Shown: positions 3,098 to 51,789, counted from the stretch's first letter. The stretch is DNA of 52,368 bases from Octopus bimaculoides (GCF_001194135.2 NC_068998.1:15282085-15334452); one strand, 5' to 3'. Numbers and translations are program-made. The notes: generated from the sequence alone by a model not told the origin.

Positions 3098-3166
3098 CTG
3101 CTGCTTCCCTGGATAATTAACCATATTCTGACCAATAACATCAAGGATTTCTTTCTGACCTCCTTT
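3098..3166 (-). CDS. Exon N (69 nt), probable PTB/PID helix
   Basis: ttttatttag|AAAGGA...CAGCAG|gtaata; KGGQKEILDVIGQNMVNYPGKQQ; phase 0/0. Confidence 0.87.

Positions 3167-51789: not shown

What the first reader, a model, noticed from the sequence alone, without database searches (positions are those of the whole stretch)
3098..51789. Hidden 14-exon gene for an uncharacterised RUN-PDZ-(PTB) adaptor, largely missed by the ORF track
Seen in sequence: 14 short exons (36-221 nt) with canonical splice sites chain into one open frame of about 356 aa over 48.7 kb, and only exon L appears in the ORF track. Established: RUN domains bind Rab/Rap/Arl8 GTPases and kinesin; PDZ domains bind C-terminal peptides; PTB domains bind NPxY motifs. 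Inference: a RUN+PDZ+PTB combination could link small-GTPase or motor trafficking to receptor tails. I cannot assign a characterised gene symbol, and I recall similar architectures only as uncharacterised invertebrate proteins.
Basis: partly seen in the sequence, partly recalled or inferred. Interest (0 to 1): 0.7.

Follow-up and report, generated by a model that had tools for sequence, protein, structure and literature searches.

The report
Octopus RUN-PDZ-PTB adaptor gene
The window holds 14 exons of a real octopus protein-coding gene, already in RefSeq as uncharacterized LOC106869617, which encodes a widely conserved but never-studied adaptor protein built from RUN, PDZ and PTB domains.

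Summary
On the minus strand, 14 exons of 36-221 nt, each flanked by AG and GT, join into 1067 nt (355 codons plus a split codon) between 51789 and 3098. That translation is identical to residues 14-368 of RefSeq 'uncharacterized protein LOC106869617 [Octopus bimaculoides]'.

All eleven assembly gaps lie in introns. A 90%-identical Argonauta orthologue and a spliced squid-like transcript are colinear across every gap-holding intron, so no exon is hidden.

The interpretation also holds:
- RUN (exons A-F): Pfam E 5.7e-15.
- PDZ (G-K): at Pfam's threshold; supported by the family profile and an AlphaFold model.
- PTB (M, N): only the first ~30% of the domain is in the window. The rest lies outside it, and full-length orthologues pass Pfam PID.

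Two corrections. The gene is hidden only from the bacterial-style ORF track, because 11 exons are in UniProt and all 14 in RefSeq. The family is not invertebrate-only: it runs from sponges and placozoans to lampreys, stickleback and frogs. Every member is labelled uncharacterized or misnamed 'RUFY4-like', and no paper was found.

The likely function, a GTPase-recruited cargo adaptor, is inferred and untested. This is an ordinary gene, correctly read.

The parts
51682..51789 (-). Exon A (108 nt; begins with 2 nt of a split codon). Start of the RUN domain: LILEFRLSEVAVNDKNEKLHTLCDIIEKIFRKGLK.
   Evidence: Acceptor ...tcttag| and donor |gtaagt. 100% identical to P0001 and P0206.
49103..49178 (-). 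Exon B (76 nt). RUN block with the conserved DYW motif: QNGGWFSKTDYWCWISKSVYDVAND.
   Evidence: Found by the splice and frame scan; tblastn; splice sites.
46205..46256 (-). Exon C (52 nt). RUN: RVNPIFVMVTNIVNESKK.
44511..44618 (-). Exon D (108 nt). RUN core motif GKGRLFIRCAL.
   Evidence: Pfam RUN hit on this exon alone (E 0.011, profile 63-93).
43850..43898 (-). Exon E (49 nt). RUN: IWYDTEYSILGNEILS.
42804..42862 (-). Exon F (59 nt). End of the Pfam RUN profile: EIFISLLFEITEIKFLLNLK.
   Evidence: Best splice scores in the scan.
39093..39128 (-). Exon G (36 nt): NASFLDETWDLP. This is the most conserved stretch of the family. It joins RUN to PDZ and aligns with the C-terminal extension of the FYCO1 RUN construct.
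   Evidence: Nearly invariant N164, F167, L168, D169 and W172.
35820..35872 (-). Exon H (53 nt). PDZ strand 1 and the carboxylate-binding loop (DIGM, equivalent to x-Phi-G-Phi).
   Evidence: G189 is nearly invariant.
33732..33792 (-). Exon I (61 nt). PDZ strands 2-3: YLSGRTLVISVVPGSVAEED.
30693..30764 (-). Exon J (72 nt). PDZ strand 4 and the start of helix B: GKVGCGDVLDELFGISLRNANKSK.
23453..23509 (-). Exon K (57 nt). PDZ helix B and the last strand: VQQILRQNRGWPIRLSVNK. The UniProt model stops here by reading through the donor (gta tga = V, stop).
13658..13878 (-). Exon L (221 nt). A short helix, then a disordered acidic linker with the conserved motif KPAHALLPGDYSDEIPVHG. It is the only exon inside an ORF-track ORF (13630..13914).
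   Evidence: tblastn with the Argonauta protein, E 5e-35. pLDDT is below 50 for the linker.
8873..8918 (-). Exon M (46 nt). First strands of the PTB domain: AFYPVLFIAEVYVGN.
   Evidence: 81% identical to Argonauta and exact in RefSeq P0206. Acceptor ttttacag| and donor |gtaagt. Strand 342-355 in the model.
3098..3166 (-). Exon N (69 nt). PTB helix 1: KGGQKEILDVIGQNMVNYPGKQQ. This is the last exon in the window. The next exons lie about 22 kb and 30 kb further on, outside it.

Best explanation
Shown. The window is an internal 52 kb piece of Octopus bimaculoides gene LOC106869617 on chromosome record CM046618.1, minus strand of the window. It carries 14 of at least 18 coding exons.

The product belongs to a single-copy-looking, pan-metazoan family of about 430-470 aa. 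The fixed order is: N-terminal helix, RUN domain (FYCO1/PLEKHM type), tightly joined PDZ domain, disordered acidic linker with one conserved short motif, then a Dab-like PTB domain that ends the protein. The window encodes RUN, PDZ, the linker and the first ~30% of the PTB.

Inferred, at about 50%. The protein is a cytosolic trafficking adaptor. The RUN domain would dock on a GTP-bound small GTPase (Arl8, Rab or Rap class) on an organelle membrane. The PDZ domain would hold the C-terminal tail of a membrane protein. The PTB domain would hold an NPx[YF]-type motif, and perhaps phosphoinositides, in a receptor tail. Cargo would then be sorted or tethered only where the GTPase is active. No partner has been identified.
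For: Gene identity:
- The 355-aa chain is identical to P0206 residues 14-368.
- The window is 100% identical to L001 13566-65933.
- All splice sites are canonical.

Transcription as one mRNA in cephalopods: an intron-less 2751-nt Logan contig encodes the colinear 468-aa orthologue.

Domains:
- RUN: 5.7e-15.
- PDZ: 23.2 bits.
- PID: 23-35 bits in orthologues.
- The family profile hits FYCO1 RUN at 5e-20, PLEKHM1 RUN at 4e-15, AIDA-1 PTB at 9e-14, ARH at 3e-12, GULP1 at 2e-11 and ZO-1 PDZ at 1e-5.
- The AlphaFold2 model of the Argonauta orthologue has mean pLDDT 86.4 and three folded domains.
- Foldseek top hits are FYCO1 RUN, SKIP RUN bound to Arl8b, the AIDA-1 PTB-NPxF complex, Numb, X11 and ARH, with target-normalised TM-scores of 0.6-0.8 for these hits.

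Selection on binding-competent features:
- The RUN motif G-x-G-R...R (G97, G99, R100, R104) is invariant in the 11-sequence alignment; in the 69-sequence one R100 stays invariant and G97 and R104 are nearly so.
- The PDZ loop glycine G189 is nearly invariant.
- The PTB C-terminal helix motif [IL]AQGF (G460, F461) is nearly invariant. It corresponds to the GQAF phenylalanine needed for NPxY binding in Shc, Dab and X11 (my knowledge, not tested here).

Family breadth: 294 HMMER hits, 63 of them below 1e-30, from sponge and placozoan to frog.
Against: - No functional data exist for any member, so every binding partner is a guess.
- PDZ support in the octopus protein alone is marginal: 19.4-23.2 bits against a cut-off of 23.2.
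- The residue at the start of PDZ helix B is not the class-I histidine, so ligand class is unknown.
- RUN domains do not all bind GTPases.
- No O. bimaculoides RNA evidence was available here. Splicing is supported by annotation and by another species' transcript.
- The last PTB exon (about 41 aa) was not found in the 98 kb locus, so an intact octopus PTB is inferred from relatives.
Confidence: 0.85

Rival explanations
1. The true product is the short RUN-PDZ protein of the UniProt model (257 aa, ending after exon K). Under this reading, exons L-N belong to another gene or are not coding.
For: UniProt A0A0L8HNA4 ends at ...SVNKV. Exons L-N alone give no Pfam hit. One cephalopod transcript cluster (P0241, 350 aa) ends just after the exon-L equivalent, so PTB-less isoforms may exist.
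Against: - The UniProt stop is the intron's own gtatga read through the donor.
- RefSeq joins K-L-M-N and two further exons.
- Argonauta, a spliced transcript and more than 60 full-length orthologues carry the same order in one chain.
- Exon L is matched at E 5e-35.
Confidence: 0.04
2. The assembly gaps hide exons or break the frame, so the 14-exon chain is incomplete or chimeric.
For: Eleven N-runs (3730 N) lie inside the span. The newer chromosome record keeps the same gaps. The last coding exon is indeed missing from the locus.
Against: No gap touches an exon. Orthologue residues 14-379 are all accounted for by exons A-N, with indels only inside exon L. The Pfam RUN profile is covered 1-130 without a break.
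Confidence: 0.03
3. The locus is a decaying pseudogene or a domain-shuffled relic without function in octopus.
For: The public models are truncated at the 3' end, and the final exon was not found.
Against: There is no stop or frameshift in 355 codons. Identity to Argonauta is 87-90%, with changes concentrated in the disordered linker. All 28 splice sites are intact. Family-invariant residues are retained. The missing exon is explained by gaps at L001 93889-94429 or by the end of the fetched locus.
Confidence: 0.03
4. The architecture is as in the best explanation, but the protein is self-regulated. Its conserved extreme C-terminus (…RTHW[FA][VL]-COOH, a Phi-x-Phi class-II-like PDZ ligand) would bind its own PDZ domain, closing the adaptor until a GTPase or cargo opens it, as in X11/Mint.
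For: 59 of the 69 aligned sequences end with …T-x-[WFY]-x-[VLI]-COOH, a bulky aromatic two residues before a C-terminal V, L or I, from frogs to molluscs and arthropods. Mint1 autoinhibition precedents appear among the fold matches (4dbb, 3suz).
Against: AlphaFold places these residues at the end of the PTB C-terminal helix (H447-467), not in the PDZ groove. Only 466-468 are of low confidence. In the sponge the motif is internal and followed by about 190 residues. These residues lie outside the window.
Confidence: 0.1

Closest known systems
FYCO1, PLEKHM1 and PLEKHM2/SKIP (RUN-domain effectors of lysosomal and autophagosomal GTPases)
   Same: They hold the closest RUN domains by sequence and fold: FYCO1 at 5e-20, PLEKHM1 at 4e-15, SKIP at 1e-9, and Foldseek ranks 1, 2 and 8. 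They share the N-terminal position of the RUN domain and the C-terminal RUN extension (…F-LD--W). The nearest non-family hits in the 1.8-billion-protein search are FYCO1-type proteins.
   Different: Those proteins are 1000 aa or longer and continue with coiled coils, FYVE, PH, C1 or LIR modules. None has a PDZ or PTB domain. The names 'RUFY4-like' and 'FYCO1' given to some family members rest on the RUN domain alone.
X11/Mint (APBA1-3)
   Same: It is an adaptor combining a Dab-like PTB with PDZ domains. It links NPxY tails (APP) and C-terminal PDZ ligands to trafficking machinery. X11 PTB structures match the model (1x11, 1aqc, 4dbb, 3sv1).
   Different: The order is PTB then two PDZ domains, with Munc18/CASK-binding N-termini and no RUN domain. 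Sequence similarity is only at domain-superfamily level (E 1.7e-4).
RGS12
   Same: It has PDZ followed by PTB in the same order in one chain (my knowledge, not tested here).
   Different: It has no RUN domain. It continues with RGS, RBD and GoLoco modules and is a G-protein regulator. It was not recovered in any search here.
ANKS1B/AIDA-1, ARH (LDLRAP1), GULP1 and Numb PTB domains
   Same: They are the best PTB matches: 9e-14, 3e-12, 2e-11 and 2e-10, with Foldseek target-normalised TM-scores of 0.62-0.81. This is the phosphotyrosine-independent Dab-like class, which binds NPx[YF].
   Different: The surrounding architectures differ (ankyrin/SAM, clathrin-box and so on). Identity is only 15-20%.

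Membership tests
RUN domain (Pfam PF02759) | Score above the curated Pfam threshold over the whole profile | tested here: met
   56 bits against a cut-off of 22, profile positions 1-130 of 131, for the translation of exons A-F.
RUN domain (Pfam PF02759) | All-helical RUN fold superposable on solved RUN domains | tested here: met
   The AlphaFold model has helices at 6-153 with pLDDT mostly above 90. Foldseek to 7bqi, 8jca_B, 2cxf and 8jc5_C gives target-normalised TM-scores of 0.65-0.79. The test was done on the 90%-identical Argonauta orthologue.
RUN domain (Pfam PF02759) | Binding of a GTP-bound small GTPase | not testable with these tools
   This is an inference only. The relatives with solved complexes bind Arl8b, Rab35, Rab6 and Rap2 (entry titles).
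PDZ domain (Pfam PF00595) | Score at or above the curated Pfam threshold | tested here: inconclusive
   23.2 bits, equal to the cut-off, for exons G-K alone. The score is 19.4-19.5 bits in the longer proteins. Some orthologues pass and others do not. The family profile hits ZO-1, INADL, LNX and DVL PDZ domains at 1e-5 to 1e-3.
PDZ domain (Pfam PF00595) | Six-strand, two-helix PDZ topology with an x-Phi-G-Phi carboxylate-binding loop | tested here: met
   The model shows strands 176-182, 190-195, 198-204, 221-225 and 250-256 and helix 237-244, with pLDDT 89-97. The loop is D-I-G-M in octopus, and the glycine is nearly invariant in 69 sequences.
PTB/PID domain (Pfam PF00640), Dab-like class | Score above the curated Pfam threshold | tested here: inconclusive
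   The window part (exons L-N) gives no hit at E<=10. The truncated RefSeq protein gives 14.8 bits against a cut-off of 20.9. Full-length orthologues give 23-35.5 bits and pass. The window holds only about 38 of about 127 PTB residues.
PTB/PID domain (Pfam PF00640), Dab-like class | Seven-strand sandwich capped by a C-terminal helix, superposable on solved PTB domains | tested here: met
   The model shows 342-444 as strands and helix 447-467. Foldseek to 8ym2, 3f0w, 2ej8, 5njj, 4dbb and 3so6 gives target-normalised TM-scores of 0.62-0.81. The test was done on the Argonauta orthologue. In the window only strand 1 and helix 1 (exons M and N) are present.
PTB/PID domain (Pfam PF00640), Dab-like class | Binding of NPx[YF] peptides | not testable with these tools
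   Conservation of the GF pair in the C-terminal helix (G460, F461) is compatible with such binding, but binding itself was not tested.
LOC106869617-type RUN-PDZ-PTB orthologue group (unnamed) | Full-length colinear similarity: MSxxDPLL N-terminus, RUN, NASFLDETW junction, PDZ, KPxHAxLP…PVH linker motif, PTB | tested here: met
   The window product is identical to the RefSeq member. Over the aligned part it is about 87% identical to Argonauta (318 of 366 alignment columns; HMMER reports 90% for P0001) and 72% to a transcript-derived member. It is about 44% identical to the oyster member and RefSeq P0206 is 33% identical to frog members. The alignments are end to end within the part the window encodes.

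The most novel reading that the evidence does not exclude
The RUN-PDZ-PTB family is an ancient animal trafficking adaptor, present in sponges and placozoans. It may have escaped study because it is absent from the classical models: no amniote, Drosophila or C. elegans member appeared in any search here. Working it out in a species that keeps it (sea urchin, oyster, a beetle, stickleback or frog) could reveal a GTPase-to-receptor-tail sorting route that mammals lost or replaced.
Probability: 0.35. Interest if true: 0.5.

Novelty: already known. Interest (0 to 1): 0.3.

Why it matters
For the genome scan this is a control case. A reader working from raw sequence recovered a 14-exon eukaryotic gene, its frame and its domain content correctly, where a bacterial ORF track shows only one exon.

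For biology, the gene is ordinary and already annotated. It does, however, flag a conserved three-domain adaptor family with no name, no paper and no assigned function. Two public octopus models are truncated by read-through of a splice donor, and several relatives are misnamed 'RUFY4-like'. If the family is truly missing from amniotes and the main invertebrate models, it is a small, testable gap in the catalogue of membrane-traffic adaptors.

Tried and rejected
1. A 60-aa query made of two RUN exons found nothing in the word-indexed protein search, even though the database holds an exact match. The index needs longer queries, so this negative meant nothing.
2. I scanned all non-repetitive minus-strand open segments of 15 aa or more against Pfam, as 20 pseudo-proteins. 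Only exon D gave RUN (E 0.011), with no PDZ or PID. Single short exons are below Pfam's reach, so absence there was not evidence against the domains.
4. My first choice for exon M (7502-7409, 94 nt, good splice scores) was wrong. Orthologues and RefSeq show 8918-8873.
5. The spliced model is not accepted by the representative-protein search, so I used P0001 instead.
6. The exact-product look-up of P0001 found no contig.
7. I considered a C-terminal tail acting as ligand for the protein's own PDZ domain. The AlphaFold model does not support it.
8. I considered a 359-aa 'short isoform' in the oyster cluster. It is an unrelated protein grouped in the cluster.
9. Three literature searches for the architecture (one search failed on a syntax error) returned nothing relevant. 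Two further searches for the Arl8b-RUN interface did not find the primary structural paper, so interface residues were not compared.
10. Transposon-like ORFs checked with Pfam gave no hit except the Tc3-type HTH.

Full report
WHAT THE WINDOW IS. The 52,368-base window is AT-rich and contains eleven N-runs totalling 3,730 N. It is full of microsatellites and interspersed repeats. A self-comparison marks 14.5 kb as repeated. It is 100% identical, in reverse orientation, to positions 13566-65933 of locus L001. L001 is Octopus bimaculoides GCA_001194135.2, record CM046618.1:15249727-15348017. That record carries the same N-runs, and the window is bounded on both sides by larger gaps.

CHECKING THE OBSERVATION.
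- Two minus-strand open segments looked like RUN-domain blocks, with AG and GT at their ends.
- A scan for AG…GT intervals open in the required phase then gave one clear candidate at each step. These were exons B, C, E and F.
- The six exons join into a 150-aa open frame that matches Pfam RUN over profile positions 1-130 of 131, at 56 bits and E 5.7e-15.
- That query retrieved UniProt A0A0L8HNA4_OCTBM (257 aa, 100% identical). Mapping it back gave exons G-K.
- Its terminal 'V-stop' is the donor gtatga of exon K read through.
- An exhaustive HMMER search with this protein found 294 relatives. They include a 468-aa Argonauta hians protein that is 90% identical.
- tblastn of that protein located exon L (E 5e-35), exon M (8918-8873) and exon N (3166-3098).
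- A profile search then returned RefSeq 'uncharacterized protein LOC106869617 [Octopus bimaculoides]' (416 aa).
- The 14-exon chain is 1067 nt, giving 355 codons after a 2-nt split codon. It is an exact substring of that protein, residues 14-368.
- All 14 exons have AG acceptors behind pyrimidine tracts and GT donors.
- Only exon L sits in frame within an ORF of 60 aa or more (13630..13914).

THE GAPS. No N-run touches an exon. They lie in eight of the thirteen introns. The newer assembly does not close them. Two independent orthologues settle the matter. One is the Argonauta genome model. The other is a 2751-nt contig from sequencing run SRR6517992 that carries an uninterrupted 468-codon ORF and so must be a spliced mRNA. 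Both align to the chain without any indel at an exon junction, and the only indels lie inside exon L's acidic linker. No coding exon is hidden in a gap between A and N. Intron lengths are only estimates.

THE REST OF THE GENE. All of the following lie outside the window:
- The first coding exon (MSVSDPLLKQLK) is at L001 5001-5039.
- Two more PTB exons are at L001 85344-85406 and 93202-93286.
- The RefSeq stop (…ICG-stop) is again a gtaagt donor read through.
- The last exon, which in relatives encodes about 41 residues ending …GF-RT-x-W/F-x-V, was not found in the fetched locus.

Both public octopus models are therefore truncated at the 3' end.

WHAT THE PROTEIN IS. Full-length relatives of 430-470 aa have one fixed plan:
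- a conserved N-terminus, MS-x-x-DPLL;
- a RUN domain;
- an almost invariant junction, KNASFLDETW-LP-Y, which is exon G;
- a PDZ domain;
- a variable acidic linker holding one conserved motif (KP-x-HA-x-LP…PVH, in exon L);
- a PTB domain that ends the protein.

Pfam gives RUN at 48-72 bits, PID at 23-35 bits and PDZ at 15-24 bits in seven orthologues. In the octopus sequence PDZ sits exactly at the threshold (23.2 bits).

A profile of 69 members hits solved structures of all three domain types:
- RUN: FYCO1 5e-20, PLEKHM1 4e-15, RUFY3/RPIPx 6e-13.
- PTB: AIDA-1 9e-14, ARH 3e-12, GULP1 2e-11, Numb 2e-10.
- PDZ: ZO-1 1e-5.

An AlphaFold2 model of the Argonauta protein, built with that alignment, has mean pLDDT 86.4. 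It shows a helical RUN domain (6-153), a PDZ domain (176-256), a disordered linker (285-339) and a PTB sandwich with a C-terminal helix (342-467). Foldseek against the PDB returns FYCO1 RUN, SKIP RUN bound to Arl8b, the AIDA-1 PTB-NPxF complex, Numb, APPL1, X11, ARH and GULP1. Probability is 1.00 and target-normalised TM-scores are 0.6-0.8.

The brackets were also apt, because the window contains only the first strand and helix of the PTB (exons M and N). Those exons alone give no Pfam hit.

DISTRIBUTION. Named members come from the following groups:
- sponges (Sycon, Ephydatia) and Trichoplax;
- flatworms, Trichuris and Trichinella, a priapulid;
- annelids, nemerteans, a brachiopod and many molluscs;
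- chelicerates, crustaceans, a centipede and beetles;
- echinoderms, hemichordates and amphioxus;
- lampreys, stickleback and six frog genera.

All are 'uncharacterized', 'hypothetical', domain-named, or misnamed after RUFY4, RUFY1 or FYCO1. No amniote, dipteran or Caenorhabditis member was seen. The word-indexed search scored only 8000 candidates, however, so this is 'not seen' rather than 'absent'.

HOW IT PROBABLY WORKS. Shown: three binding modules in a fixed order, with the residues that usually matter kept under selection.
- In RUN, G-x-G-R…R is kept: R100 is invariant in both alignments; G97, G99 and R104 are invariant among 11 sequences and G97 and R104 nearly so among 69.
- In PDZ, the loop glycine is nearly invariant.
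- In the PTB C-terminal helix, the G-F pair is nearly invariant.

Inferred: by analogy with the closest RUN domains (effectors of Arl8b, Rab35, Rab6 and Rap2), with Dab-like PTB domains (NPx[YF] tails, often with phosphoinositides) and with PDZ domains (C-terminal tails), the protein is a GTPase-recruited cargo adaptor. I put this at about 50%, because no partner is known for any member.

The invariant RUN-PDZ junction suggests a rigid two-domain unit, with the PTB on a flexible tether. The conserved C-terminal …W-x-V-COOH looked like a ligand for the protein's own PDZ domain. The model, however, places it at the end of the PTB helix, and in a sponge it is internal. I rate that idea at about 10%.

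VERDICT. This is a real gene, read correctly. It is already present in UniProt (11 exons) and RefSeq (all 14), so it is not new as a sequence. The family is functionally blank. That gives the finding modest interest beyond being a good validation of the first-stage reading.

Noticed in passing
window 23447-23453 (-); L001 93285-93291: Both public octopus protein models end at a stop codon created by reading through a splice donor. UniProt A0A0L8HNA4 reads AAG|gta tga after exon K. RefSeq LOC106869617 reads GG|g taa after its last exon. Both are truncated at the 3' end relative to orthologues.
   Followed up: yes
L001 93292-98291 (outside the window): The final coding exon expected from relatives (about 41 aa, GETTC…GFxRTxFxV) is not found in the 5 kb after the last annotated exon. 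A 541-N gap lies there (93889-94429).
   Followed up: partly
window 44512-44721 (-): An ORF-track ORF of 69 aa overlaps exon D but in a different frame. Its 'HFWNVFDLL' stretch looks RUN-like by eye and first misled me. It is intron plus out-of-frame exon.
   Followed up: yes
window 13630-13657 (-): Reading through the donor of exon L adds 8 residues (LVFDFFLY) and a stop. A related cephalopod transcript cluster (P0241, 350 aa) also ends a few residues after the exon-L equivalent. A PTB-less RUN-PDZ isoform, made by intron retention or an alternative 3' end, may exist.
   Followed up: partly
window 13658-13750 (-), exon L: Inside an otherwise disordered, poorly conserved linker (pLDDT below 50) there is a motif conserved from molluscs to hemichordates: KPAHALLPxxxxDExPVHG. 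It is a candidate short linear binding motif of unknown partner.
   Followed up: no
window 15214-15546 (+), in intron K-L: A 110-aa ORF carries Tc1/Tc3-type transposase helix-turn-helix domains (Pfam HTH_28 at 1.2e-8, HTH_Tnp_Tc3_2 at 2.4e-5). This is a transposon relic. At 17473-17700 (+) an ORF with 'YSPDLAPAGFHLLPKMK' looks like a mariner transposase C-terminus by eye, but Pfam gave no hit.
   Followed up: partly
window 5361-5975 (-), 10002-10323 (-), 29422-29991 (+): Three fragments share motifs typical of the C-terminal part of LINE reverse transcriptases (…GVHQGSVL…PLLF…, …RLRWYGHV…RGRPRKTW…). They lie in introns M-N, L-M and J-K. Pfam gave no significant hit, so this is recognition by eye only.
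   Followed up: partly
many sites, e.g. window 4246-4482, 8065-8349, 16681-16938, 30085-30534, 35464-35607, 37970-38089, 47826-48069: A short interspersed repeat recurs on both strands. Its translations read '…MLAWVGWFD…' and '…FLQLDALPNANHSESVVGAF…'. Together with other repeats, 14.5 kb of the window matches elsewhere in the window.
   Followed up: no
window gap borders, e.g. 26400-26425/26634-26700, 40134-40185, 50336-50361/50498-50520, 20661-20750: Several assembly gaps are bordered by simple repeats: (TA)n read as YIYIYI, and a (GACA/CAGA)n run read as DRQT. This probably explains why the gaps were not closed. A long ATT/ATC-type run fills 1214-1808.
   Followed up: no
relatives (not in the window): Several database names look wrong. 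'RUN and FYVE domain-containing 4-like' (Argonauta, Argiope, Paragonimus, Trichoplax) and 'FYCO1' (Sycon) are given to proteins with no FYVE hit in the Pfam domains listed for them (scanned here only for Argonauta and Sycon). Trichinella 'Tectonic-2' (901 aa) is this family fused to an unrelated C-terminal part.
   Followed up: partly
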